Source: Ginglymostoma cirratum (Eukaryota). Taken from it: a stretch of DNA of 64,000 nucleotides. The translations under genes were made by a program, and so were the position numbers. Under the pieces are notes generated by a model. It searched no databases. It was not told the DNA's origin and worked only from the letters and a program-made list of their open reading frames with translations. The stretch spans positions 7,577,126-7,641,125 of the forward strand of contig JAHRHZ010000101.1 in the NCBI GenBank assembly GCA_024137785.1. The letters run 5' to 3'. This document shows, one piece after another, positions 30,511 through 61,306 of this stretch (the first letter of the stretch is position 1; every line of letters starts with the position of its first letter).

Positions 30511-32761
30511 TTGGATGTTATTAAATGAGGTTAGGCACTTTATTAGTGGGCTGGGTGCTGGTATGTAGGAGGTTTAGGGGTTCTTAAAGGGTACTGGGTA
30601 AATTCTCTTAAGTGTTGTGTGTATATTGTTAGTAATAACAAAAATGGAGTAGTATATGGGAGTAACAGGGCAGTCCTTTAAGAGATTAGTATAATTTTTA
30701 GATGCTCTGGGTAATTGATAACATGCAGCTTGGTAGTCATATTAGAAAATGTAAGCTTGCAGGTGGGGCATGGGGAATGAGCTTGGGGATGTGCAAATGA
30801 AGAGTGGGGGTAATCCATGGCAAAGCATGTGGAGAAGGCATCTAAAAAATTAGAGGAATAAATTGGTAGGAGTACTTAGTTAATTCATTAGACGAAGTAA
30901 CTTAAATTATAGTATATTCTGCATCCTTTATAGTACATCTTTTGCTTAATATATAAGACGTCCTCAGGACAGTGAACTAAAGCTGCATCTAACTCACTTT
31001 CTGCCATCTCTTGGAATTTTTGACATAGCTTATGAGGAGAGAGAGGATTACTTCATAATTAATGTGTTATGTACATTCTGTGTTAAAATTTGATAAGGCA
31101 GTATAGTGCTGAAGGAGCAACAACAAATGTTGCCAGTTTTACATAATGAAGATCGATTGAAGAGATTAATCTTTACTTATATTTAAAAGGCGGATATGTC
31201 ACATTCTTGACATGTTTATGATTCTCAGGATATTTCACACAGTGGATTTAGTATGGATACATTGTTTTAGGACTCTTTCATTGTATATGAGATTGACTGG
31301 CTCTTCCAAACTTTTTTTTCTAAATCACACTTACTGTTGACAAATTGGAGCTGATCTGTCATCTTCATCAGCAGCAGACCAGAGGAGCTGCTATGCCCTC
31401 TGTTGTACAGAAAGTAGTCCCAGGGTTGTGATCTACCATCAGCAAAGAAATGGCGCTACAGTGAAAAGATCATATGCTGTGAAAATTGAAGAGGCACTTG
31501 GTGGTGTTCCGACGAATCTGCTCCGCTATGCGTTCTGGATGGTAGAAGTCGCAAGATTGGCAGCTGCTGTTCAAAAAAGCTTGGTGAGTATCTGCAACTC
31601 ATTTTATGGACAGTAATCACTTCTGTCACTGTGTATCTGAGTTGGAAGAACTAAGTCTTGAAGCTATTGAATACGGTTCTAATCAATTTCGAAAGCACTT
31701 TCCTGAATGACGCAGACATTCTTTCATCTCAAAACTGATCTCATTGATTGTTGCAGCATGCTGGATGGCCTAAATGGTCCGGTCCTGCTCAAAAGCTCTG
31801 CGTTCCCACCCCACTAGGAATGTTTGATAGTGTCTTGAATAACAGAATACATCCAAGCTGTTCTTCTTGGTTTCGGTCAATGTAGTTAAGAGAAGACTCG
31901 ACAACAGCAGTTCGCTGTTGAACATTTATTGAGTAAAAATAAAAGATGGAAGACGAAGGAAAAATAAAAGACTGGACTATGAACATTTACTAAGTAATAA
32001 ATGAAGACGAAAAAGGAAGGGAAGGAAAGCAATGAGCCTTATGACTTCCAGCACCTCGGGGAACCGTCATTCGACGGCTGGTCTGGAGGGTTAAGTTTCT
32101 TGCTGGCCCAGTTTGCAATTCTGTCTGAGATGAATTCCAACGATTCGGGACGAAGCTCTCACTCTAATGCAGTGTAACAAGCAACCAGTAATGAAAAACA
32201 AATACAGAGAACATTCCTGATAGTGCCGTCTTCCACAAGTGCGGGAATGTTCTCAGGATTCATTCAAAGTCATGCAGCTGTCGAATATCATCAACAATTG
32301 TTGTCCTTCTGCCCATCCTATTACAGATAGAGACAGAGGGTTATTGGCTTTGTCTCTAACTACCGATGCACGGACATTGGGATTCTTATTGTAACTCTGT
32401 CAATGAAGTTTGCATCTTTAATGTCTCGTCCTTTATCTAACAGTTTCGCCAGCTTTTAGAATGACCTGATATATGTCCGTGAGAGGAAGGAGTATTAGTG
32501 AAATCACTGAACTGTGCAATCTTGTGCATCGGAGTTTTTGATTTAAGAATATATTATCTAGAAGTAATGTTCGAAGGCTGATGAGGGCAGTGCAGTGACG
32601 ACTTCATGTAACGAGTTTGGATTAAAACAAAATCAAAGCCCAGGAATTGAGAAAATACTTGTTTTTAAACGGAAGAGGAAATGCAGAACGGATAATTGAG
32701 CTTTGATGATGGGCTTTGAGGAAGGAATGCAGCGAAATCGAAGCTCACTTTCAATTGAAGA

Positions 32762-32767
32762 TTTATT
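32762..32767 (-). terminator. Candidate membrane-form poly(A) signal AATAAA
   Basis: TTTATT on + strand about 380 nt past the TM2 stop. Confidence 0.55.
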
Positions 32768-33148
32768 AACAATTTCAGAGACAATTCACAGAATTCACAG
32801 AAAGTTTGAGAACATAATACACGGGCTGTGAGCTGCAAAATGTATGTACAGTTTTACAAATGACCAAAAATAAAGCAGCAGGACAAAATAAAGTGAACGG
32901 AACAATTCTGGATTTTTTTTAAAAAAGTGAATGTTATGCATATTGGGGAAATTATAAGCGCAATTAAATTATAGCGGTAATTATGTTTTGCAAATTTCAA
33001 ACAGAAAAACCGTAAGCTGCCTTCATGACTGTCTCCGTTACAGACTTGGAAACTACTTTGCATTTCGACTAACCAGAATTTCAAATCCGTAATGCAGAAA
33101 CCGTAATAGATAGCTGCAGAAGGTTTACAGCATCTGAAACTGAACCGA

Positions 33149-33157
33149 TCATTGGAC
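33149..33157 (-). CDS. IgM1gj: IgH TM2 exon (VQ-stop)
   Basis: Strong acceptor CCCTTTTTTTTCAG at 33158, then GTC CAA TGA, after a 139-nt intron. Gives cytoplasmic tail KVQ (cf. KVK). Confidence 0.8.
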   Translation of the reverse strand, partial: VQ

Positions 33158-33296
33158 CTGAAAAAAAAGGGATAAAATATTGAAGGGTCTACTTATGACC
33201 GAGAATATCTATGTTTCACACTTTAATGAACAAAACATTTACTAAATGCCCAAACAGTTTATCAGGTTGAAATGTGAATGGGCTAACTCTCCTCAC

Positions 33297-33421
33297 CTTC
33301 ACCAGAGTGACAGCCGCGCTGTAAAAAATGGTCAGGATGAACAGGGTGGTGAAAGTAGAAGCGGTTTTCGAAATGTTGTCATCGCCTTCATAGCCTTCAA
33401 TCCAGGGGTGATCTGCAGAAT
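33297..33421 (-). CDS. IgM1gj: IgH transmembrane exon TM1
   Basis: Acceptor CATAG at 33422, donor AAG|GTGAG at 33296, 125 nt, phase 1-0. (D)SADHPWIEGYEGDDNISKTASTFTTLFILTIFYSAAVTLVK, with the TASTF..LF.L..FYS..VTL membrane-mu motif. Confidence 0.92.
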
Positions 33422-33994
33422 CTATGACATATACGAGAGCAGATATATTTATATCGTTTATTCATCAATGCTTATTATTTTTCAATCATTTTCTTTTCGA
33501 TTTATTAAGCTATTATTAGTTAATTTAAATTTCAATATATATTTACTGCAAAATTCGCGACCTCAGCGATCTACCTATGTGAATATCTCCACAGAAAATA
33601 TATATGTGAGCACTTGACTCTGATCAGTGTTTAGATAGCGTCAGTAAACAAAAGAGCAAAATGAATTCTCATCCGTCTAAACTCAGTTTGTGATGGAAAT
33701 GTCTTTGCACATCAATGAATTAAATCACTTTCGAAGGAATAAGAATGCTTCACTGTAACTTATAGTACTGATTGGGGACAATTGTCGCAAGTCGTGTCCA
33801 TTAAAATGCATTTGAATTATATCTTTATTCTATCATTTGTGTCTGTTCTTCAAAGTTTGATTGTGAGTGCGTGAGATATTCTTGTTTTACATTACATTAT
33901 TGTTGTATTTCCACATGTGCGTAAACGTTTGCATTCATGTGCCATTGAGCATGAAGGTGTGCATTTGTCGCAGTTTGATGTATATTGCTTTCAT

Positions 33995-36130
33995 TTTTGA
34001 TTTGATTTATTCCTGTCATGTGTGCCGGGGTACAGTAAAAAATGTTGTCTTACTTGCGTTACAGGCAGATCGCACTATACAAGTGCAACACGGTAACAGA
34101 ACAGAGTGCAGGATAAGTTGGACAGCTGCTGAGAAGATGCAGCGAGTGATGAATATTAACATTTAAGAGGTTTGCTCAAAAGAGTCCTAACAGCAGAGAA
34201 GAAACTGTTCTTGAATCTGTTCCTAAGTATATTCAAACGTTTACATCTTCTACTCGATGGAAAAGGGTGGAAGAGAGTATAATCAGGGTGGGAGGAGTCC
34301 TATGTTGCTTATCCCAATGCAGCAGAAAGTATAAATGAAGATATCAAGAAGCTTTTTCCCAGAGTGGGGGACTCAATTACTAGCGGTCATGAGTTCAAAG
34401 TGAGAGGAGGAAAGTTTACCGGAGATATGCGTGGAAAGTTCTTTACGCAGAGGGTGGTGGGTGCCTGGAACACGTTGCCAGCGAAGGTGGTAGACGCAGA
34501 CACATTAGTGTCTTTTAAGATGTATCTGGACAGGTAGATGGATGGACAGGGAGCAAAGGGATACAGACCCCTAGAAAATAGACGACAGGTTTAGACAGAG
34601 GATCTCGATCAGCGCAGGCTTGGAGGGCCGAAGGGCCTGTTCCTGTGCTGTAATTTTCTTTGTTCTTTGTTTGTCAATAGATGGGTGGCTGGTTTCCGTG
34701 ATGAACTGGACTATGTTGACACTCTCTGTAATTTCCTGCAGTTTTGGGAAAAGCAGCTGCCATAGTATGCTGTGATGCATCCAGATAAGATATTTTCTGT
34801 GGTGCATCCATAAAAGTAAGGTAAATTTCTTAATGGAAGCGTCGAATTTCCTTAGCATCCTAGGGAAGTAGAGGCATCATTGTGCTTTCTTGACCACAGT
34901 TTCAACATGGTGGTCCAGAACAGATTGTTGCTGATCGTCATTCCCAGGAAATTGATGGTTTCAATCATCACCACCTCAGCACCATTGATGCCCGACAGGC
35001 TGACTTCATTCCACTTCCTAAAGTCAATGACCAGCTCCTTCGTTTTTCTGACACTGAAGGCGAGATGGTTATCCTTACACTGTGCCACTAAGCTCTACAT
35101 CTCCCTCTTGCACACCGCTTCGTTGCTGTTTGAGATCTGACCTACAAAGATGGTGTCATCAGCAAATCTGCAAGTGGAATTGGTACGGAAATTATCCATG
35201 TATTTGTGCGGGTATAGTATGAGGCTGAGTACACAGCCTTGTAGGGCACCTTTGTTGAGGATTATAGTAGAGGAGGTGTAATTGACTATCCTTTCTGACT
35301 GTGGTCAGTTGGTCAGGAAGTCAAATCTCCAGCTACAACATGGGGAGTAGAGATCTAGTGTCCAGAGTTTGAAGATGAGTTTGTTTGGAAATATAGTGTT
35401 GAAGACGGAGCTGTAGTCAATAAAGCAGGAGACTGACTTGTTTTCAAAATGTTCCTGGGATGTGTGTAGGGGCAGGAAGAGGGTATCTGCCATGGAGCTG
35501 CTGCTTCCATAGGTGAACTGCACGGAATCAAGACAATCCGGAAGGTTGGAGTTGATGTGAGCCATGACAAACCTCTCAAGGCACTTTCTAATTATGGATG
35601 TCTGACTCACCAGATGTTAGTCATTGAGGCATGCTGCAGAATTTTTGCTTGGCACGAGACTGGTAGTGATCTTCTTGAAGCAAGTGGGAACTTCAGATCG
35701 TCATAAAGAGAGGACTGTGATGTCTGTGAATACTCCTGTCATCTGGTCTATGCGGATCTGAGTGCATTGGCCAGGGACACCATCCGGGTCTTTCGCTTTC
35801 TATGGGTTCACTCTTAAGAAGAACTACCTAATGTCTGCAGTGGTGATTGTGGGTACGGGTACATCCTCGGGTTTTGGGACAGATAACGCCATTTCAATCT
35901 CCTTCTGTTCAACTCGAGCACAGAACGCATTGAGCTCATCAGCCGGTTGGGGGAGGGGGGTAAGTGGGAAGGGTGCAGTGTGATGGGTAGAGATGTACTG
36001 TTGTCTGCCATTCTGTTCGACATCACTTTGTAGCCCGTTATACCATGTAAACCTTACCACAAACGGTAGGTGATCATATGTTTAGTCTGGGTATCAAGCT
36101 TAGTTTGGTATTGCCTCTTGGCGTACCTGG
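33995..36130 (-). mobile_element. Rex1/Babar-type LINE with a nested CR1 3' end (plus, about 34345-34670)
   Basis: KCLERFVMAHINSNLPDCLDSVQF, FIDYSSVFNTI, DNHLAFSVRKTKELVIDFRK. Confidence 0.8.
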
Positions 36131-36619
36131 GATAATGTCACTAGGCACAGGAAAGCACAATGCCGCACTAAAGACATAACAACAAAAGTCGAAGTCACTC
36201 CGGCAAGCGCTTCAATTTCAATTCAATCAATAAATATTCGACTGTAAAGAAGTCTTAATATTGGTGACAGCTATTCGTAAATTCTGTTTGTCAAAATTTG
36301 CCTATCTTTCAAGTGTATATCAATTGTCTTTATGCCTACGTTTTTGAATGAAAATGTAAAAAAAAACAGTAACACACGTTTTTACAAGTGTATTAAAAGG
36401 AAACGAGTAGATAAAATGAGTAGTGCTTCTCTGGATAATGAACATGCGAACTAATAGCACATAATAAGGATGTAGTGAATGAAATATACACAAACAAATC
36501 TAGCTTTTCTGTAGATAGTACAAGAAACAGTCATCTGAAAACAGAAATTCGAGACGTGTAACAAGCAGATAATTTTGTTGACCGTGAACGCACCAGTAAA
36601 GTGGAACTAAGAAAATGGA

Positions 36620-39600
36620 CAGAACTATTGGTGCTGACAAGACTTGGACTTCATGGCCCTCATGTTATAATCTTAAAAGAAGTGGCTGCTGTGGTGCAAG
36701 ATACGGCTGCAGTAACTTTCTAAAATGCCCTGAGTCAGGAACGCTTCCATTATTCTGGAAAATAGCAAACATAACCCATACGAATATAAGATCATAAGGT
36801 GTAGAAGCGGAATTAGGTCAATCCATCCTTCATGCTGTTTTGCCGTGTAATCATTGCTGATATCTTTCTCAAACCATATAACACCTGATTCACATACTGA
36901 TCAAGAAAATTTCATATCTGTCACCCCGGTTCTCAAAAAAAGGAGAGTCTGAAAACAGCAACCATAGACCAATTATTTTGCTCTCTGTCTTGTGGAACAT
37001 TTCAGCATCAAACGAAAAGGTTTCATTGGACACTTAGAACTTGATAATTTGGTTATCTTCTTTTCGGGAATAAGATGTGTCGGGTTATTGGGGTGCTGGT
37101 GGCTGTACAATGCTTGGATTTCTGGAAGATATTTGAGAAGCTGCCACATCAATGTATAATGCAGAAAATAAATGCTTATGATGAAAGAGTGACCTATGAA
37201 TGTGAATAGAATATTGGACTGATAGGCAGAAAAGAGGATAATGTACAAATTATACTTTGCTTGATTGGCAGGATATGAAGGTGGAGTACGTATTGAATTG
37301 TGATTGGGCCTCAACATTTTTTAAATAATTATGTCAATGACAAATTGAGAGAGAGAACATAGAACATAGACCAATACAGCGCAGAACAGGCCCTTCGGCC
37401 GTCGATGTTGCGCCGCCCTGTGAACTAATATAAGCCCATCCCCCTACACTATCCCATCATCATCCATATGCTTATCCAAGGACTGTTTAAATGCCCCTAT
37501 GTGGCTGAGTTAACTACATTGGCAGGCAGGGCATTCCACGCCCTTACCACTCTCTGAGTAAAGAACCTGCCTCTGATATCTGTCTTAAATCTATCACCCC
37601 TCAATTTGCAGCTATGCCCCTCGTACTAGCCGACGTCATCATCCTAGGAAAAAGACTCTCACTGTCCACCCTATCTAATCCTCTGATCATTTTGTAGGTC
37701 TCTATTAAATCCCCTCTTAGCCTTCTTCTCTCCAATGAGAACAGACCCAAATATGAAAACAGACCCAAAGAGGAGGCGTGATAAGTAATATTGCAGAACG
37801 CAGGACCACAATGAAGAAATTACGATGTCAAGAAGTCAAGGAGTTTGCAACCCTCTCTAGATAGTCGGTACAATTAGTGTCCAAGAGTCACACAGTACGG
37901 AAACAAACCCTTGATCCAACTCGTCCATTCCGATCAGGTACCTGAAACTGAATTGACTGCATTTAGCTTGCATCCCCTTAAACCTTTCTTATACATGTAC
38001 CTGTCAAGATATCTTTTAATTGTAATTTTACCCACCTGTACCACTTCCTCTGCCAGGTCGTTCCATAAACACAGCAACTTCAATGTGAAAAAATAATGCC
38101 CCTCCAGCCCCTTTTAAACCTTTCCCCTCTTTTCTTAAAGCACTGCCCTCTAGTTTTGTACTCCACTACCCTGGGAAAATGACATTGACTGTTCATCTTA
38201 TCCATGTCCATCATAATTTTATAAACCTGTGTAAGGTCACCTGTCAGCTTCGGGAGTTCCAGGGTAAAAATAAGGTCCCAGGCTATCCAGGCTCTCCTTT
38301 TTAACGCAAACCCTTCAGCCCTGGCAATATCGTTGTAATTTTTCTTTTCTGCTCCCTTTCCAAGTTAACAACATCCTTCCTGTAGCAAGGCGATCAGAAT
38401 TGCATATGCTATTCTAAAAGTGACCTCATCAATGTCTCTTCAGCCGCAATATGAACCGCCAACTCCTCTACTCAATGCTCTGACAAATAAAGGCGTGTGA
38501 CAAATGCCTTTGTTACCACCCTGATTACCTGCGATGCCCCTTTCAAGGAACTGTATACCTGAACACTTAGGTCTCTCAGTTCAACAACACTCCTCGGGGC
38601 CCTATCATTAACTGTTTAAATCGTGTCCTACTTTGTCTTATCAAAAACACAACATTGTGCATTTATGTAAGTTAAACTTAATCTGTAAACCACGGCCCAT
38701 CGGCCTAACTGATCAAAATAGTGTTGCTCCCTCAGATAATGTTCTTCACTGTTCACCATGTCAGCAATTTTGGTGTCATCCGCGAACTTACTAACCAAGC
38801 CTCCTTTATTCGCATCCCAATCATTTATATAAGTGACGAGTGACAGAGGACCCAGCAGTGATCCTTGTGGCATACCGCTTGTCACAGGTCTCCATTCCGA
38901 ATAGTAAACCTCAACCACCACCCTCAGTCTCCTACCGTCAAGCCAAACTTGAACGAAATTGGCTAGCTCCCTCTTGGATCCCATATGGATCTAACGTCAC
39001 TAACCAGTTTACCATGCTGGACCTTTTTGAATGCCTTCCTAAAGTCCATTAGACAACATCTACCACTCTGCCTTCATCAATCTTCTTCACCACTTCTTCA
39101 GAAAAGTTTCAGTCAAGTTTGTGAAACATAATTTCCCACACACAAAGCTACACTGACTATCCCTAACCAGTTCTTGCATTTCTAAATGCATGTAAATCCT
39201 GTCCTTCAGGATCTCCTCGCACAACTTATCCACAGTTGACGTCAGACTCACTGATCTATAGTTCCCTGCCATGTTCCTTGCAGACTTCGTTAAATAACAG
39301 CACAACATTAGCCACCCTACAGTCTTCCAGCAACTTACCCATAGGTGTCGGTACAAAAATGTCTACAAGGGGCCCACAGACTCTCCACTGCGTTTCCACA
39401 ATGTTTAGGAATACACCTCATCAGGTCTCTTGGATTTGTCTGCCTTTGTAGATTTTAAGATTTCCAGCATCTACTTTTCTGTAACGTGGACTCTTTTCAA
39501 GACATCACTATTTATTTTCCCAAGTTTCCTAGCTTCCATATCTTTCTCCACTGTAAATACTGGTGGGAAATACTTATTTAGTATCTCAACTATCTCCTGT

Positions 39601-40860
39601 GATTCCATACATAAACGGCTTCGTTGATCTCTAAAGGGCCCCATTATCTCCGTAGTAACATTTTTTGCACTTCATGTACTTGTCGAATCACTTTGGATTC
39701 TCTTTCACCTTATTTGCAAAAGCTAACTCATATCCCCTTTCTGCCCTTCTGATTGCCTTCTTAAGTGTACTCTTACTCCCACTATACTCCACCAGGGAAT
39801 CACTTGATCCCAGCAGCAGGAATCTGACATATCCCGCCTCCATTTCCTTGACCACAGGTTCAATGTCTCTTGTCAACCAGCGTTCTGTATAACTACAAGC
39901 CTTGTCTGTCACACTAACAAGAACATATTGTCTCTGAACACCTGTTATCTCACTTTTAAAAGCTTCCCACTTGTCAGCAGTCCCTTTACCTGTGAACAGC
40001 CTCCCTCAATAAACTTTTGAAAGTTCTTGTCTAATACTGTCAAAATTGGTTTTGCTCCAGTTTAGAATTCTAACTTTTATATCAGGCTGAAGTACGGATA
40101 AGTATGAAGTTGCACACTTTAGTATGAAGTAGGAAAACAAAGAGAAAATCAAAGGATCAAGAACTGTTGACTTCAAAGGCATAGTTGAATTCAGATTTTC
40201 AAATGTACTAGTCATAATGTTGCCGTATGCAATTAAGGTATAGAACCTACTAAACTGAATAGGGCGGCTGTCCCTTTTTAGGAGAGGAATTGAATATAAA
40301 AATAAGAATGCCATGCTTCAGTTTTACAGGCCAATGGAGAGGCCAAATTGGTCCCTCATTAAAGCAAGGATAGAACTTGTTTTGGAAACTCTTCAGTGGA
40401 GGATTGACTAATACCTGGAATAATGGCTTGTCCCATGATATTAGATTGGATAATTTGGGATTATTTATCATGAACCACAACAGATTAAGGGTTGACGTTG
40501 TTATATTTATGAGATCTTGAGCTGTCATTGCAAGATGAACTTGGTAAGGATGTGTCGCTCTTGTCGAGTCTGAAACATGAGAATCGACTTAAAAGTGAAA
40601 AGTGAACCAGTTGAGAGAGGTATGTGGATTTTCTCTTCTCACGGTGGTTGGTGCATTTTGGGAATACTCTGGCTCAGAAGATGCTGTATGGTGGGTTTTT
40701 TTATATTAACGTTGGTGGATAGATTCTTTTTAGGCAAATAACTAAAAGGAATGTGGAATTCGAAACACGGAACACAAAAATATCAGACAAGACTTTCATA
40801 AATGTCGGAGCAGGGTTGATGGATCGAATAGCCTAATTGACTTCTCAGCCGTAATTTCCT
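36620..40860. mobile_element. Cluster of CR1 fragments in the CH4-TM intron (largest about 37890-40080, minus)
   Basis: GNYRSVSLTSTVDK, VTSGMPQGSLLGPL, VSKFADDTKI. Confidence 0.85.
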
Positions 40861-41465
40861 TAACAGAGTTATCCACTTTTAAAATGAGTCCATCTGAGTT
40901 AATAAATCCCCCATTCCTTGGTGGGGAGGGGGAGTGGTGTTTAACAAAAATACCTTTCTGCTTCGGTTTTGGGTACTCTGTAGAGCTAATGATGAAGATT
41001 TTTGAAATTATTCTTTTCTCTCTGAAGAGGGCTCGTTGCTGCTCGTGAACGTATCTGGCTGTCAGTTCACATATCAGCGAATATGTCGCAGGAACTTAAA
41101 ACTGGCGGCAATACGATGGGATGGGCAATAAGAGAAGGAATACTGATACCTAAATGTACTTTAATACAAATTGAAAACTACTAAAGAGCCTGTTTCCACA
41201 CTGTAGGGATTCTAATAAATTTCTTTGCAGAGGGAGAAAAGTTGCTGTTGTTATTTTGCACGATCCTTCATGAATGAGCTCTATGCTGTTTCTCTTCTGG
41301 GTTTATCTGAGTGAGGAGAACTGTTCATGCAAGACCTGTGAATATCTTAATCCTAGTAAACCGGTCTAAATTTCGGAAAAACGGCGGCGGGGTGGGGAGG
41401 GAGTGCGGTGGTGGTGGTGGTGGGTAAAAGCATTTTTTGAAACGTCACAGTTGGACGATAATGTC

Positions 41466-41471
41466 TTTATT
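41466..41471 (-). terminator. Secretory poly(A) signal AATAAA
   Basis: TTTATT on + strand, 32 nt beyond the tailpiece stop. Confidence 0.8.
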
Positions 41472-41503
41472 GATTTTAATGAATGCTAAGTATAAGTGAA
41501 ATT

Positions 41504-41895
41504 TCATTTACATGAATTAACGGTGCCCATTAGTGCAAGGGAAATATTCACAAAACTCAGTTTACCGTTGGATTTATCAACTGTTCTGTTGATAATTTTT
41601 AAGGGAATCGCTTCATGTCCCACCACGCAGGAGTACGAAACACCGCTGGCCCACTCCTCTGCTGCAACTGATAACAGGCTGTACATGAAGAAGGAGTTAT
41701 TGTCGTTCTCCGCTATCACTTCGGTGTTCTTGTAGTTCACAGGATTCATCAGTTTATTATTGCTAATCCACTTAACAAAGATCTCTCGGGGATAGAAATC
41801 TTTCACTAAGCAAGTGAGGGGAACAACTCTCTGAGCAGAGACTTCTTCTGTCGGGGGCAGGAGTATTGAAACGAACGGTACTCTCAGATCTCCAG
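41504..41895 (-). CDS. IgM1gj: Third constant exon (IgM CH4 homologue) plus secretory tailpiece
   Basis: Acceptor CTGCAG at 41896. [43 protein letters not shown]...[43 protein letters not shown]. Tail has an NIS sequon and penultimate Cys. Internal TM donor G|GTAAA at 41565. Confidence 0.95.
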
Positions 41896-42598: not shown

Positions 42599-42907
42599 CT
42601 TCCTTCTTGTGGATCGAACTTCTGAGAGGAGTTGACAGATCCTGATGATTCACTATACAGGAGAAATCATCGCCGCTCAGCCAAGCTTGTGTCGAGACGT
42701 TTAGTTTGCTGACCACGCTGTCGGGATCCTCTCTGGTTTGAACGACAACATTTGATTTCAGAGACCTTTCCCCCCGTGTCCAGGAAATGTTGACATCATG
42801 AGGGACGTTGAAGGCGATGCAGGTTAATGTCACTGTAGCCTCTAGCAAAGCCTGTTCTATTGGCGGTGGGAGGAGATTAACCCTGATGAGACTGCACGTG
42901 GGAACAT
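42599..42907 (-). CDS. IgM1gj: Second constant exon, homologous to IgM CH3
   Basis: Acceptor AACAG at 42908, donor G|GTGAG at 42598, 309 nt. [19 protein letters not shown]...[30 protein letters not shown] matches shark C-mu3. Confidence 0.93.
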
Positions 42908-44654: not shown

Positions 44655-44954
44655 CTGGCATTTCCACTCGCCAGACAGACCTGCTGTATCGAACTTCACA
44701 GTATATCTTGCAGCATCTCATTTCTGAATCAGTGAAGGTTAACTGGCTGCTCAAAGCGTAGTTTCCCTCCTTGTTTCTCACTGATGGATAAGTCATAAAT
44801 CCAGTGATTATCGGCTCCCTGTCTTTCTTCCACGTCACTCTGATGACGTCAGGGGAATAATCCGTCGCCAAACAGACGTAGGTCACGGAACTGCCGGTGT
44901 TATGTTGTTGGTTGAATGAGATTAGGCCGTAGAGTGTGGGAGGAAACGGTTTCT
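44655..44954 (-). CDS. IgM1gj: IgM-type CH1 exon
   Basis: Acceptor CCCTAG at 44955, donor G|GTTGGT at 44654, 300 nt, phase 1-1. [43 protein letters not shown]...[17 protein letters not shown], shark C-mu1 pattern. Confidence 0.93.
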
Positions 44955-46198: not shown

Positions 46199-47526
46199 GA
46201 TAAAGGGTACTGCAGATGCTGTAGAATCCGAGATAACAAGCATGGGGCTGGATGAACACAGCAGGTCAAGCAGCATCATAGGAGCAGGAAAACTTGACGT
46301 TTCGGGCCTAAACCCTTCATCAGAAATGGGGGAGGGGAAGAGGGTTCTGAAATAAATAGGGAGAGAGGGGGAGGCGGATAGAGGATGGATAGAGGAGAGG
46401 ATAGGTGGAGAGGAGGCAGACAAGTCGAAGAGGCGGGAATGGAGCCAGTAAAGGTGAGTGTAGGTAGGGGGGTAGGGAGGAGATAGGTCAGTCCAGGGAG
46501 GACGGACAGGTCAAGGGGGCGGGATGATGTTAGTNNNNNNNNNNNNNNNNNNNNNNNNNNNNNNNNNNNNNNNNNNNNNNNNNNNNNNNNNNNNNNNNNN
46601 NNNNNNNNNNNNNNNNNNNNNNNNNNNNNNNNNNGGGGGGGGTAGGGAGGAGATAGGTCAGTCCAGGGAGGACGGACAGGTCAAGGGGGCGGGATGATGT
46701 TAGTAGATAGGAGATGGGGGTGTGGCTTGAGGTGAGAGGAATCTCTCCTCCCCCAACCGCAAAATCCCGCACATCTCAAATGTCCTCATTCTTCAAGGAC
46801 CGCAACTTCCCCCCCACAGTGGTCGAGAACGCCCTCGACCGTGTCTCCCGCATTTCCCGGAACACATCCCTCACGCCCCGTCCCCGCAACAATAATCAAA
46901 AAAGAATCCCCCTCGTCCTCACATACCACCCCACCAACCTCCGGATCCAACGCATCATCCTCCGACACTTCCGCCATCTNNNNNNNNNNNNNNNNNNNNN
47001 NNNNNNNNNNNNNNNNNNNNNNNNNNNNNNNNNNNNNNNNNNNNNNNNNNNNNNNNNNNNNNNNNNNNNNNNNNNNNNNNNNNNNNNNNNNNNNNNNNNN
47101 NNNNNNNNNNNNNNNNNNNNNNNNNNNNNNNNNNNNNNNNNNNNNNNNNNNNNNNNNNNNNNNNNNNNNNNNNNNNNNNNNNNNNNNNNNNNNNNNNNNN
47201 NNNNNNNNNNNNNNNNNNNNNNNNNNNNNNNNNNNNNNNNNNNNNNNNNNNNNNNNNNNNNNNNNNNNNNNNNNNNNNNNNNNNNNNNNNNNNNNNNNNN
47301 NNNNNNNNNNNNNNNNNNNNNNNNNNNNNNNNNNNNNNNNNNNNNNNNNNNNNNNNNNNNNNNNNNNNNNNNNNNNNNNTCCGCCTCCCCCTCTCTCCCT
47401 ATTTATTTCAGAACCCTCTTCCCCTCCCCCATTTCTGATGAAGGGTTTAGGCCCGAAACGTCAAGTTTTCCTGCTCCTATGATGCTGCTTGACCTGCTGT
47501 GTTCATCCAGCCCCATGCTTGCTATC
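46199..47526. mobile_element. Penelope-like element with inverted terminal repeats (two N gaps inside)
   Basis: Terminal repeat in both orientations, internal PLE ORF piece (RIPLVLTYHPTNLRIQRIILRHF), 16-bp TSD tcctgttgtagtgaga at 46183-46198 and 47527-47542. Confidence 0.85.
47435..47462 (+). ncRNA. Minimal hammerhead ribozyme motif in a Penelope-like terminal repeat
   Basis: CUGAUGA-A-GGG-uuuagg-CCC-GAAA-CG-UC, with short helix I (auuu/aagu). Confidence 0.65.
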
Positions 47527-54256: not shown

Positions 54257-54619
54257 CTTCAGTTACCGTTACTCTGGTCCCTTGTCCCCAGTAGTCCAAC
54301 GCCCACCCAGTCGATCCTCTTGCACAGTAGTAGATGGCACTGTCCTCGGTTTTCAGGTTCACTATGTCCAATGCAATCATATTGTTTGAAATGTCCTTCG
54401 ATGCAGTAAATCGGTTGCCAATCCCTGGGTTGTAGTGAGTGTCTGATACAATGTAATAATAAATTAGCCACTCCAGCCCCTGTCCTTGAATCTGCCGCAC
54501 CCAATTCATGCCATGGTACTCCAGGTCGAAACCGCTGATTTTACAAGTCAGTTTCAGGGAGCCTCCGGGAATGCTAGTCTCTGCCTCTGGCTGTGTCAAC
54601 ATAATATCCGAACGGATAC
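54257..54619 (-). CDS. IgM1gj: Pre-joined VH-D-JH exon of an IgM1gj-like heavy chain
   Basis: Acceptor TACAG at 54620, donor G|GTAAGG at 54256, 363 nt open. [10 protein letters not shown]...LTCKISGF...[13 protein letters not shown]...[25 protein letters not shown]. No heptamer/nonamer between V and J. Confidence 0.95.
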
Positions 54620-54966
54620 CTGTAATAATATCATAACAATCCGGAGGATTAATCATTGTGAAGTAAATCCCGCCTGCAACATTGCAGAAAGTGATTGTCA
54701 ATGAGACAACCCAAGCGCGAGACTCGGACATTAAAAATACATCGCAAACCCTAAGTACTAATCCTTACTGAATTAATTATTACTGAATCTGTATCATTCC
54801 AACGATAGACTAACAGAAACAGTGAGAGTTTAGGACAAAAGCAAATGAAATTTAATAAAAACAGACTTTAATACAGCTGAAATGATTACATCCTGTATAA
54901 CACTCTAAAGATAGACTAACGTTAATACCATATCATTGGGGCATTTTGGCAATAATAAGTTCTTAC

Positions 54967-55012
54967 AAGATATGGAAGTCAGCAACAAACTGAGGGAAAT
55001 CGCTGACTGCAT
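54967..55012 (-). CDS. IgM1gj: IgH leader exon (MQSAISLSLLLTSIS + first base of Cys)
   Basis: ATG at 55012, 46 nt, phase-1 donor T|GTAAGA at 54966. Hydrophobic shark-VH-type signal peptide completed by CIRS in the next exon. An in-frame upstream ATG lies at 55024 (MIRR). Confidence 0.9.
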
Positions 55013-55107
55013 TCTTCTGATCATATTGTTTCATATAAGTTGCTTTGACTAGAACTCACTGAGCAAACCAGCTCCCAGGTTCTGGTATGACGGTCCCAGT
55101 GGTCGGC

Positions 55108-55118
55108 TCTTAAATATC
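55108..55118 (-). promoter_or_regulatory. TATA-like element of the VH promoter
   Basis: GATATTTAAGA on the minus strand about 100 nt upstream of the leader ATG. Confidence 0.5.
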
Positions 55119-55936
55119 CTGCAGAAGTGGGCAGGTTTACAGACACTTTTTTTTTCCCGGTGTTGATCGAGTGACTGAATCCTGTCGCAAATTCCACATT
55201 CGAAATAGAATGGCCTCCTATATTTAAAATAGGTTATTATTAAAGTTGGAGATTTCAGACGTATCAGGATATTTGTCAGGTTGAATATTTTAAATTGAAT
55301 TTCCTTCTTCGGTTCAATATTGAAGTTATAGTTAGTATCTGCTAATAACGCAAGCAAATAATTTTGGAGAAATCTAATTAGCAATTCAATTTCAAATTAA
55401 GTTTCTATGCTGGTACGTAATCATTTAAACCTACCTGTTTAAAGTAAATTGCAAGGGAATAAAGAGACTGACATCATATTTTACAATAATTACACGTGAC
55501 TATCACATTGCAGTTCCTCATATTACTTTCTGATCCAGTTTGATTATGAAGTGAAAATGGTATATCGTGAAACAATACATGTGATTAAAAACAAGCATAT
55601 AAAACTAACTTTCTGTTTGTTGACCAGTAAATTATTCTTTGTCATTCAATCGCACGTTTGTTTATTTGCATTCACCAGGACTTTTCCAAAAGTATTTGGC
55701 AACAATCCAACCAATTACAAGCAGCGAGTCTTATAATGATATCTAACAAAAGCATCTCGTGACCTGATCCTATAAAACAAAAGTCGGCTTCGTCCTTATT
55801 GACAGCGTGGCTGAAGTCCAATTACCATTCATAAATAATTCTCCCATGAAAGTAGGTATAAACAATGTCCAATCGTCTACATATTGAGTGCAACATAACA
55901 TCGGGATCGTTAAACATTCAGACAGGCAGAGGGCAA

Positions 55937-56041: not shown

Positions 56042-58419
56042 NNNNNNNNNNNNNNNNNNNNNNNNNNNNNNNNNNNNNNNNNNNNNNNNNNNNNNNNNNN
56101 NNNNNNNNNNNNNNNNNNNNNNNNNNNNNNNNNNNNNNNNNNNNNNNNNNNNNNNNNNNNNNNNNNNNNNNNNNNNNNNNNNNNNNNNNNNNNNNNNNNN
56201 NNNNNNNNNNNNNNTCGCTGATTGATGTGAACCCCCATCTGATTCAGTAGTGTTCGCCAGGAACGAACGTGTTGTCGAGGCTCCATGTGGTGCAAGAATA
56301 GAATAATAAGGGCGACTATTAGCTGAATTCTAAGAAGAGCTTGGAAGCCATTTATTATAAGAGCAATTACGGATTGACAACAAATTGCCAGTGACAATTA
56401 GGGACACTGTTAAAATAGTAAATATAAAACAAATGGCTTTAAGACTCGTCAAATGAACATTAATATTCCTGTGTCCCTCTCTACACTGTCATGTCATCAG
56501 AATGAGGCTGTTACCATACAGTTTAGATGCACAGCAAACCTTCGTCTGCACTGGCCATTCAAACACACCCATGTCAGTAGCAATAAAGTTTTCGCACAAA
56601 AGTAAGATTCAGTTAACATTTCGTGTCAAATGCTCTCAGGTCAGTCACATCCCATATCAGATACAGAGTAAATCTCTCCATACACACACACACACATTCT
56701 GACATCCAAAGCAATCAGGACATAGGCAGTGCATGTCAGCTTTTGATAAAATCTCCCTGTTCATTGTCCCATTAATTACATCCATGTCCGAAAGAAAGCA
56801 ATTTATAAGCTATATATAGCTCCCTCTAAAATACCCCATTAAACCATCCCAGTTCATATGCAGAGGCGGCCATCGTCTACACTGCAATGTATCACATCTC
56901 CAGGAGGTACAATGCCCTAAAATAATGAGTGAATCTGTCGCTACTTTTTAGATACAATAAAGTTTTATTACTAAGTAAAACTTCCCTTGTTTGCATTTAG
57001 TTTGAAACGAATCAATTGGGTTAATAGAATAAGTTGTCCGACTGTGAAGTACAATAGCAAGAATCACACAGGGTGAGTACAGCGATGTGTGATTGGATAC
57101 AGGAATAAACCATAAATTATTTCCTATTTTACAATTATTTACGATTAGAAGAAAGGCATTTAATCATTGTGAACATTTGTGTCATCAGTATCTACTGTCG
57201 TTAAATTGTTGTTATTTTAATTTTTGTCTGTACCTATGGTCTGTTAATGGAAAAATATTTGTTTCGTTTCCTGGTTAAAGAAACTAATTTAGAACGACTA
57301 TTTATGATCGTATTTGCATAAACGCCTCGGTGATTTCAAGTAGCATTTACAGCAACAAAAACAGATTTTAAAAAAAGTCACTGATTAGTTCACTTCAAAA
57401 GAAAAGTATTTCAAGACATTGACAGTTGAGTCAAACGAATACACAATGCTAAGCATTTTTTTAAAAAAATGATATTTATTTCCGAAGAAAATCATAGTTT
57501 TGTAATTTTATTTTAGTATTCAGGACTATAGGTTATACTGCCACAACTAAAGAAATATTTCTGACAAGCTGGAGCTACTCCTAAGACCTATTTGATTGAA
57601 ATTTTAAAACATTTAGACCAAACAAATAACAGAGCTTTCAAAATATCTCAAAATCCAATTGAAAAGTGAATATTTATGTACCATTAGCATGTCGGAGAGC
57701 ATTTTGATTCTATTGATATGTTTTCTTTGGTGAAGTTCAGCCACTTCTGTATTGTTGTTAATCCGACAGGTGCGTTGAGTACAGTAAAAGAGTTGTAACA
57801 AATGCGTCGGTTATATGTGATTTCAGTCGATAAATAAATAATGGCGCAGAAACTGGTAGAACTATCGTGCCTTATAGAATAATACTGGAGCCTCTTCAGC
57901 CGCTCATTGACGTGACAAATCTACCTGATTCTCTCGCTCCATATTCTCATAAGGTAGAATCCATCGAATCATAGTATTCGTCTGATTAAGAGGAACAACC
58001 GAAGTTAATACACAAAAATGTTCGTGGTTTGTATATGATCATGCTTTTATAAAACATTTTAACTTAATGTTTGCAACCGCGAGGCACACAGATAAATTAT
58101 TATCTTCAGAGTTATTCTCTAGCATTTGACGCCTTCACCTGTTTAATCCCTCAGATCTGGAAGCACCTTCCTCCTCAATAGTTTACCTTACTATATTCGC
58201 TTGCGTTATTTCATAGAACCTGTCGCTTTGCCCAAGCTTTTAGTCAATTAATCTATTGTCTCCTTCGGTAGGTGATCAGCCTGCGTTATGTCCTAAAACT
58301 CCTCTGAAGGGCTTCACAGTGTGTTTCCCCCCATTTTTTTAAAAAAATGAGCTCTCTGAGTATAAGTTATTGCAAGTTCTTACTGTTACATACACTGAGA
58401 ACTGCAACGATCAGAAAAA

Positions 58420-60642: not shown

Positions 60643-61306
60643 GAGATAAAAGGGACTGCAGATGCTGGAGAATCCGAGATAACAAGCATGGGGCTGGATG
60701 AACACAGCAGGTCAAGCAGCATCATAGGAGCAGGAAAACTCGACGTTTCGGGCCTAAACCCTTCATCAGAAATGGCATTTCTGATGAAGNNNNNNNNNNN
60801 NNNNNNNNNNNNNNNNNNNNNNNNNNNNNNNNNNNNNNNNNNNNNNNNNNNNNNNNNNNNNNNNNNNNNNNNNNNNNNNNNNNNNNNNNNNNNNNNNNNN
60901 NNNNNNNNNNNNNNNNNNNNNNNNNNNNNNNNNNNNNNNNNNNNNNNNNNNNNNNNNNNNNNNNNNNNNNNNNNNNNNNNNNNNNNNNNNNNNNNNNNNN
61001 NNNNNNNNNNNNNNNNNNNNNNNNNNNNNNNNNNNNNNNNNNNNNNNNNNNNNNNNNNNNNNNNNNNNNNNNNNNNNNNNNNNNNNNNNNNNNNNNNNNN
61101 NNNNNNNNNNNNNNNNNNNNNNNNNNNNNNNNNNNNNNNNNNNNNNNNNNNNNNNNNNNNNNNNNNNNNNNNNNNNNNNNNNNNNNNNNACCCTTCATCA
61201 GAAATGGCATTTCTGATGAAGGGTTTAGGCCCGAAACGTCGAGTTTTCCTGCTCCTATGATGCTGCTTGACCTGCTGTGTTCATCCAGCCCCATGCTTGT
61301 TATCTC
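60643..61306. mobile_element. Penelope-like inverted cassette spanning an N gap
   Basis: Perfect inverted arms; TSD-like caat(a/g)ggtcctgtt on both sides. Confidence 0.8.
61213..61240 (+). ncRNA. Minimal hammerhead ribozyme motif
   Basis: Same motif; inverted twin at 60742-60769. Confidence 0.65.

What the first reader, a model, noticed from the sequence alone, without database searches (positions are those of the whole stretch)
33149..33421. Intact TM1 and TM2 exons: a possible pre-formed invariant B-cell receptor
Seen: an open TM1 with canonical splice sites, TM2 VQ-stop, a downstream AATAAA, and the matching donor G|GTAAA kept in CH4 at 41565 in the right phase. None of this is in the ORF track. 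As I recall, IgM1gj was characterised as secreted with no membrane form shown. Inference: the locus could make a RAG-independent surface receptor, with implications for allelic/cluster exclusion and neonatal B-cell selection.
Basis: partly seen in the sequence, partly recalled or inferred. Interest (0 to 1): 0.85.

Follow-up and report, generated by a model that had tools for sequence, protein, structure and literature searches.

The report
Intact membrane exons of germline-joined IgM
A shark antibody gene whose V, D and J pieces are already joined in inherited DNA also keeps intact membrane-anchor exons, so it could make a fixed cell-surface receptor without gene rearrangement, but I could not test whether that form is ever expressed.

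Summary
On the minus strand, TM1 (33421-33297) and TM2 (33157-33149, Val-Gln-stop) lie 8.1 kb downstream of the CH4 exon. They have good splice sites, the in-phase CH4 donor G|GTAAA (last exon base 41566), and an AATAAA 381 nt after the stop. They are the only Ig membrane exons in the window. They belong to one complete heavy-chain cluster: leader, germline-joined VDJ, CH1, CH3, CH4 with secretory tail, and no CH2. That is the architecture published for nurse shark IgM1gj.

TM1 is homologous to the mu membrane segment of other sharks (57-71% identity, same splice junction) and of human and mouse membrane IgM in solved B-cell receptor structures. It keeps every residue that deep mutational scanning of mouse IgM found necessary for surface expression. 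Neutral drift cannot explain this.

So the coding capacity for a rearrangement-independent membrane chain is real and looks maintained by selection. The primary IgM1gj papers are not held, so prior knowledge of a membrane form is unresolved. Other first-reader notes in this scan flag a CH2-less IgM gene and IgM TM exons elsewhere in this genome. This is an expected feature of a known gene type; interest is moderate.

The parts
54967..55024 (-). Leader exon. The ATG is at 55024 (an alternative ATG is at 55012) and the donor is T|GTAAGA. A 347-nt leader intron follows.
   Evidence: The signal peptide resembles the catshark mu leader in P0010. The exon ends in phase 1.
54257..54619 (-). Germline-joined VDJ exon. 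It reads V-set framework, then Cys-Ala-Arg, a fixed CDR3, and Trp-Gly-Gln-Gly of J without interruption. There is no recombination signal sequence. The donor is G|GTAAGG.
   Evidence: Sequence read. Pfam V-set at E 7e-17.
44655..44954 (-). CH1 exon (C1-set), phase 1 in and phase 1 out.
42599..42907 (-). Second constant exon, homologous to conventional Cmu3. No Cmu2 exon exists between it and CH1.
   Evidence: Residues 107-208 (Cmu2) of the conventional chain P0005 have no hit of their own in the window.
41504..41895 (-). CH4 exon with the secretory tail and its stop (41506-41504). The internal donor for the membrane form follows base 41566.
   Evidence: ATTAAA and AATAAA lie at 41480 and 41471.
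33422..41565 (-). CH4-TM1 intron, 8144 nt. It holds a decayed LINE-type reverse transcriptase in the same orientation as the gene (about 38.1-39.4 kb).
33297..33421 (-). TM1 exon: an acidic extracellular spacer, the membrane-spanning helix, and the first cytoplasmic Lys.
33149..33157 (-). TM2 coding part: Val-Gln-stop. The 3' UTR continues downstream.
32762..32767 (-). First AATAAA after TM2, the likely poly(A) signal of the membrane mRNA.

Best explanation
These are the genuine membrane exons (TM1 and TM2) of a complete, germline-joined, CH2-less IgM-type heavy-chain cluster of the IgM1gj kind.

The gene has the standard mu-secreted / mu-membrane layout. Transcripts that end at the poly(A) site just after CH4 give the secreted chain. 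Transcripts that run on for 8.1 kb can splice from the weak donor inside CH4 (after base 41566) to TM1 and TM2. That replaces the secretory tail with an acidic spacer, a 19-22 residue helix and a Lys-Val-Gln tail.

Because the VDJ exon is already assembled, this membrane chain would need no RAG activity. Paired with a light chain and CD79a/b, it would form an invariant B-cell receptor on the cells that later secrete this antibody.

Shown here:
- the exon anatomy
- the homology
- retention of the residues needed for receptor assembly

Inferred:
- that the exons are spliced in
- that the chain reaches the surface
- that it signals
For: - **Anatomy and phase.** These are exact. All exons are phase 1, so the reading frame is kept.
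- **Ownership.** The window holds only one set of Ig exons, and TM1 lies downstream of it in the same orientation.
- **Same junction as conventional chains.** Bamboo-shark models join Lys-Ser-Ser to Asp-Ser-Ile-Asp. The published nurse shark membrane probe primer mem1 starts GATTCGATAGATCAC (PMC2435157). The window reads G + ATTCTGCAGATCAC.
- **Conservation.** TM1 is 57-71% identical to conventional shark mu TM segments, and CH4 is 59-75% identical. Simulated drift at 0.3 or more substitutions per site keeps an open frame with at least 71% identity in 0.4% of trials or fewer.
- **Critical residues.** I aligned TM1 to mouse IgM in structure 8EMA and used the numbering of the mutational scan in PMC11300204.
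  - A5, F8, L11, F12, Y18, S19, V22, T23, K26 and V27 are all kept.
  - There is no charge or proline from T7 to position 25.
  - L13 to Ile is within the allowed set.
  - The lost Trp (W2) is a position the scan found tolerant for surface expression.
- **Hydropathy.** The core scores 1.85, against 1.97-2.11 for known mu TMs.
Against: - No transcript evidence exists. The run search for the TM-3'UTR stretch listed no RNA holder.
- No database protein carries this TM sequence.
- TM1 is somewhat more diverged than TM segments are among conventional mu genes (57-71% against 70-86%). It has a one-codon deletion, and Trp-Thr is changed to Ser-Lys at the outer membrane edge. The scan found Lys or Arg generally unfavourable there.
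- The tail ends in Gln instead of Lys.
- The CH4 donor is also the Gly-Lys codons of the secretory tail, so its conservation is not independent evidence.
- The 8.1-kb intron carries a sense-oriented LINE remnant and 10 poly(A) hexamers. These could limit read-through to TM1.
Confidence: 0.6

Rival explanations
1. The exons are an unused relic. The gene is expressed only as a secreted chain in plasma-like cells of the neonate, and TM1/TM2 are intact but under relaxed constraint and rarely or never spliced in.
For: - No RNA holder was listed for the stretch.
- Accessible reviews mention only serum forms.
- TM1 is more diverged than conventional TMs are from each other.
- The conserved Trp is lost, a Lys is gained at the outer edge, one codon is deleted, and the tail is KVQ.
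- The long intron holds a sense-oriented LINE and many poly(A) hexamers.
Against: - Every assembly-critical position is kept and no stop or frameshift is present.
- All four splice sites and the stop position are kept.
- Identity is as high as in CH4, which certainly is under selection.
- The changed juxtamembrane positions also vary in the horn shark mu TM peptide AAB20992.1 (P0006), so they are not strongly constrained in sharks.
Confidence: 0.25
2. The exons are used but the receptor is non-canonical. The membrane chain is made, but the altered outer edge (Ser-Lys for Trp-Thr) and the KVQ tail change its behaviour. Examples would be weaker CD79 assembly or altered internalisation and antigen presentation, so it acts mainly as a developmental or survival signal.
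For: - In mouse IgM, W2L leaves expression and signalling intact but lowers antigen presentation.
Against: - This extrapolates from mouse to shark.
- The horn shark mu TM peptide also lacks the Trp.
- No functional data exist.
Confidence: 0.12
3. The TM exons belong to another gene or are a chance open frame.
For: The 8.1-kb distance from CH4.
Against: - No other Ig exon exists anywhere in the window on either strand.
- The orientation and phase are the same as for the cluster.
- tblastn gives E 2e-13 to mu TM segments.
Confidence: 0.02

Closest known systems
Conventional shark membrane IgM heavy chains (for example Chiloscyllium punctatum chiPu_0018444 = P0005, and Scyliorhinus torazame models)
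   Same: - Two TM exons after CH4, with the same CH4 internal donor and the same junction.
- An acidic spacer.
- The helix core: Ala-Ser-Thr-Phe, Leu-Phe, Phe-Tyr-Ser-Ala-Ala-Val-Thr-Leu-Val-Lys.
- A two-residue TM2.
   Different: - Here the V region is germline-joined and Cmu2 is absent.
- The spacer is one codon shorter.
- Trp-Thr is replaced by Ser-Lys.
- Ile-Thr becomes Thr-Thr, Phe becomes Ile and Ser becomes Thr in the helix.
- The tail is KVQ, not KVK.
Nurse shark IgM1gj (Rumfelt et al. 2001, as summarised in PMC5192425, PMC4279169 and PMC6795676)
   Same: Germline-joined VDJ, three C domains with Cmu2 missing, and a canonical secretory tail with the penultimate Cys.
   Different: Identity to the published cDNA could not be checked, because no IgM1gj sequence or primary paper was reachable. 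The accessible reviews describe only serum monomers and dimers and say nothing about a membrane form.
Mammalian membrane IgM in the B-cell receptor (PDB 7XQ8, 7XT6, 7WSP, 8EMA, 8E4C)
   Same: Homologous TM helix (E 1.4e-4). All positions that the mutational scan of mouse IgM found essential for surface expression are identical or within the tolerated set.
   Different: About 55% identity over 31 residues. There is no Trp at position 2, Lys sits at position 3, and Gln at position 28. Partnership with CD79 is untested in sharks.

Membership tests
Membrane-form mu heavy chain (mIg TM exons) | Two small exons downstream of the last CH exon in the same orientation, with TM2 encoding two residues and a stop | tested here: met
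   TM1 33421-33297 and TM2 33157-33149
Membrane-form mu heavy chain (mIg TM exons) | Internal 5' splice site in CH4 upstream of the secretory tail, in phase with TM1 | tested here: met
   AAC G|GTAAAC with the last base at 41566, phase 1. G+AT gives Asp. The donor overlaps the Gly-Lys codons of the tail, so it is not independent evidence.
Membrane-form mu heavy chain (mIg TM exons) | Sequence homology of TM1 to known mu TM segments | tested here: met
   All four hits among 1.84 billion representatives are shark mu TMs. PDB membrane IgM hits at E 1.4e-4.
Membrane-form mu heavy chain (mIg TM exons) | Residues needed for BCR surface expression (A5, F8, L11, F12, Y18, small residue at 19, V22, T23, K26, V27; no charge or Pro at 7-25) | tested here: met
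   Alignment read against PMC11300204. This extrapolates from mouse to shark.
Membrane-form mu heavy chain (mIg TM exons) | Short three-residue cytoplasmic tail beginning Lys-Val | tested here: met
   The tail is Lys-Val-Gln. The third residue differs from the usual Lys; catshark models have Lys-Ile-Glu.
Membrane-form mu heavy chain (mIg TM exons) | A CH4-TM1-TM2 spliced mRNA exists | not testable with these tools
Membrane-form mu heavy chain (mIg TM exons) | Assembly with CD79a/b and surface display | not tested
   Needs experiment.
IgM1gj-type gene | V, D and J fused in germline DNA, with an open frame and no RSS | tested here: met
IgM1gj-type gene | Three constant domains, with Cmu2 missing from the genome | tested here: met
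   Three C1-set exons. No hit for Cmu2 of P0005.
IgM1gj-type gene | Identity with the published nurse shark IgM1gj cDNA | not testable with these tools
   Neither the published sequence nor the paper is reachable. The nearest database proteins are from carpet sharks at 74-79%.

The most novel reading that the evidence does not exclude
The germline-joined, CH2-less IgM gene is expressed in embryos and neonates as an invariant, RAG-independent surface receptor. Its altered membrane-proximal edge (no Trp, an added Lys) and KVQ tail tune it for tonic or self-ligand-driven selection of an innate-like B lineage rather than for antigen uptake. Its presence on the surface would have to be reconciled with exclusion of the rearranging IgM clusters.
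Probability: 0.25. Interest if true: 0.65.

Novelty: new member of a known kind. Interest (0 to 1): 0.4.

Why it matters
How the cells that pour out the neonatal, pre-determined shark antibody arise is a small but real open question. They may be selected through a surface receptor, as mammalian B-1 cells are, or they may bypass receptor-dependent development. Intact, constraint-bearing membrane exons make the first option concrete. They also give exact primers and junctions for a one-day RT-PCR or read search. If the membrane form is expressed, it is a natural case of a B-cell receptor made without RAG. It would also be a test case for how multi-cluster sharks enforce one heavy chain per cell. 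The feature is nonetheless what one would expect of any mu-type gene, so the surprise is limited.

Tried and rejected
- **RNA evidence.** The look-up of sequencing runs on 32740-33430 listed no run. I report that none was listed, not that none exists.
- **Paralogue or orthologue DNA.** No shark DNA could be fetched for dN/dS or for comparing intron sizes.
- **Homologues of the stop-free ORF around TM1** (region 14-55). The search found no candidate, because of the tool's length window.
- **Homologues of CH4.** The search found only carpet-shark and whale-shark fragments at 74-79% identity, none from this gene.
- **Literature.** Rumfelt 2001 (PMC29333, PMID 11172027, DOI), Castro 2013, Lee 2008, Rumfelt 2004 and Hsu 2006 are not held. 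Text searches for IgM1gj and spelling variants gave only three reviews, none of which mentions a membrane form.
- **Joined model.** Exons were searched separately by reference. The only joining was a local translation of the single split-codon base plus TM1, to check phase.
- **Typed peptides.** Three short TM peptides copied from tool output were typed into one local hydropathy script.
- **New Asn-Ile-Ser sequon.** I considered it as a functional change and set it aside. It lies about eight residues from the strictly embedded helix, which general knowledge of oligosaccharyltransferase distance limits puts too close for glycosylation. This was not tested.

Full report
**1. The observation**

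- TM1 runs from 33421 to 33297 (125 nt), behind the acceptor ...GTCATAG|A. It ends at the consensus-like donor AAG|GTGAGG.
- A 139-nt intron ends in a run of eight T followed by CAG. It leads to TM2 at 33157-33149, which reads Val-Gln-stop.
- The first AATAAA follows at 32767-32762, 381 nt after the stop.
- In CH4, the sequence AAC G|GTAAAC places a donor after base 41566, just before the secretory tail.
- That single G plus the first two bases of TM1 makes an Asp codon, and 42 codons stay open.
- The secreted end has its own ATTAAA and AATAAA, 26 and 35 nt after the CH4 stop.

**2. The gene these exons belong to**

tblastn with the window's own exons and with full-length shark mu chains finds one set of Ig exons only. 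All are on the minus strand and there is no second TM-like hit. Pfam calls one V-set and three C1-set exons. Exon borders read from the sequence:

| Exon | Coordinates |
|---|---|
| Leader | 55024-54967 |
| VDJ | 54619-54257 |
| CH1 | 44954-44655 |
| Cmu3-like exon | 42907-42599 |
| CH4 (starts at) | 41895 |

- All exons join in phase 1.
- The VDJ exon runs without interruption from the framework through Cys-Ala-Arg, a fixed CDR3 and Trp-Gly-Gln-Gly to its donor. It has no recombination signal.
- The Cmu2 part of a conventional chain (P0005 residues about 107-208) has no counterpart in the window.
- This is the architecture that reviews describe for nurse shark IgM1gj: a germline-joined VDJ and three C domains with Cmu2 missing.
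- I could not compare it with the published cDNA.
- The nearest database proteins are from carpet sharks and the whale shark at 74-79% identity. That fits an orectolobiform shark whose own proteins are not in the collection.
- Notes by other agents of this scan call the genome nurse shark. I did not test that myself.

**3. Homology of TM1**

A search of 1.84 billion representative proteins with TM1 returned four hits, all shark mu membrane segments. One is the horn shark peptide AAB20992.1. A region search seeded with the TM of bamboo-shark P0005 added catshark and skate chains.

Two lines of evidence place the conventional junction at the same site:
- The gene models join ...Asp-Lys-Ser-Ser to Asp-Ser-Ile-Asp...
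- The published nurse shark membrane probe primer begins GATTCGATAGATCAC (PMC2435157).

The upstream acceptor at 33421 is therefore the homologous one. Against the PDB, TM1 matches human and mouse membrane IgM in the B-cell receptor cryo-EM entries 7XT6, 7WSP, 8EMA, 7XQ8 and 8E4C (E 1.4e-4).

**4. Is TM1 maintained or decaying?**

Per-domain identities:

| Comparison | CH4 | TM |
|---|---|---|
| Window vs conventional chains | 59-75% | 57-71% |
| Conventional chains vs each other | 56-85% | 70-86% |

- The window's TM has diverged somewhat more than usual, but no faster than its own CH4, which is certainly functional.
- I ran a simple drift simulation starting from the present sequence. At 0.3 substitutions per site, an open frame with at least 71% identity survives in 0.4% of trials. 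At 0.5, it survives in none.
- CH1 and Cmu3 are only 53-63% identical to the shark conventional chains, and about 40% to the skate-like one. The neutral distance is therefore very likely larger than 0.3. This last step is inference, because no paralogue DNA could be fetched.

**5. Residues that matter**

I mapped TM1 through the alignment to mouse IgM, using the numbering of the deep mutational scan of the mouse mIgM transmembrane domain (PMC11300204).
- **Kept:** A5, F8, L11, F12, Y18, S19, V22, T23, K26 and V27.
- **Helix interior:** there is no charged residue or proline from position 7 to 25.
- **Tolerated changes:**
  - L13 is Ile, which is allowed.
  - S15 is Thr, which is not aromatic and so is allowed.
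  - Positions 20 and 21 are Ala. They are among the most tolerant positions, and Ala is also found there in other sharks.
- **Lost Trp (W2 to Ser):** the scan found this position tolerant for surface expression. Earlier work cited there links it to antigen presentation.
- **Possibly costly change:** Lys at position 3, because basic residues are generally unfavourable at the outer edge.
- **Shark variation:** the horn shark mu TM peptide has Ile-Asp-Asn where others have Trp-Thr-Thr. These positions evidently vary in sharks.
- **Hydropathy:** the core scores 1.85, against 1.97-2.11 for known mu TMs.

**6. Mechanism**

The layout is the classical choice between two mRNA ends. Either the transcript is cleaved just after CH4, or it reads through and splices from a weak internal donor to the TM exons.
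- The weak donor (no G at +5) and the nearby secretory poly(A) site are as in other mu genes. This is established knowledge of mu-secreted / mu-membrane processing.
- The 8144-nt intron holds a decayed LINE reverse transcriptase in sense orientation, plus seven AATAAA and three ATTAAA hexamers. These could lower the yield of the membrane form.
- In nurse shark lymphoid organs, the membrane mu transcript is in any case far rarer than the secreted one (PMC2435157, Figure 8 legend).

**7. What could not be done**
- The decisive test, junction reads, was not possible.
- The primary IgM1gj literature is not held. I cannot say whether a membrane cDNA was already reported, and I put that at roughly one in three from memory alone.

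**8. Verdict**

The exons are real, belong to this gene, and look maintained by selection. The feature is expected for a mu-type gene, so I rate it a new member of a known kind with moderate interest.

Noticed in passing
window 33412-33421 (minus strand): A second AG lies 9 nt inside TM1 (TTCTGCAG|ATCAC). It would also splice in frame and drop three residues from the start of the spacer. The conventional nurse shark cDNA primer shows an AG at the same place (GATAG|ATCAC), yet the upstream site is the one used there.
   Followed up: partly
window 38083-40005 (minus strand): A decayed LINE-type reverse transcriptase (weak RVT_1 hits, broken frames) sits in the CH4-TM1 intron, in the same orientation as the Ig gene. 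Similar RT-like ORFs are scattered through the window.
   Followed up: partly
window 54967-55300 (minus strand): The leader exon has a catshark-like signal peptide and a 347-nt intron. No Ig octamer (ATGCAAAT or its complement, one mismatch allowed) lies in the 276 nt upstream of the ATG. The only near-match, ATTTGCTT, is inside the leader intron at 54846.
   Followed up: partly
window 44655-44954 (minus strand): CH1 lacks the early Cys that conventional shark mu chains carry (Ser-Ser-Cys-Gln is Ile-Ser-Phe-Asn here). It has an extra Cys-Cys pair just before the second domain cysteine, so the light-chain disulphide may be made elsewhere.
   Followed up: no
protein P0014 (MCY5962400.1): A 66-residue fragment that clusters at 90% identity with a shark IgM CH4/secretory-tail fragment (P0002) is deposited as a Salmonella enterica hypothetical protein on a 336-nt contig. 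It is probably contamination of that assembly.
   Followed up: no
protein P0007 (Chiloscyllium punctatum chiPu_0016370): A bamboo-shark gene model joins V-CH1 directly to the TM segment (276 aa). It is either an annotation artefact or a short membrane form. All Ig exons are phase 1, so such joins stay in frame.
   Followed up: no
window 46535-46634, 46980-47379, 56042-56214, 60790-61189: There are four N runs, two of them in the VDJ-CH1 intron. None lies between CH4 and TM2.
   Followed up: no
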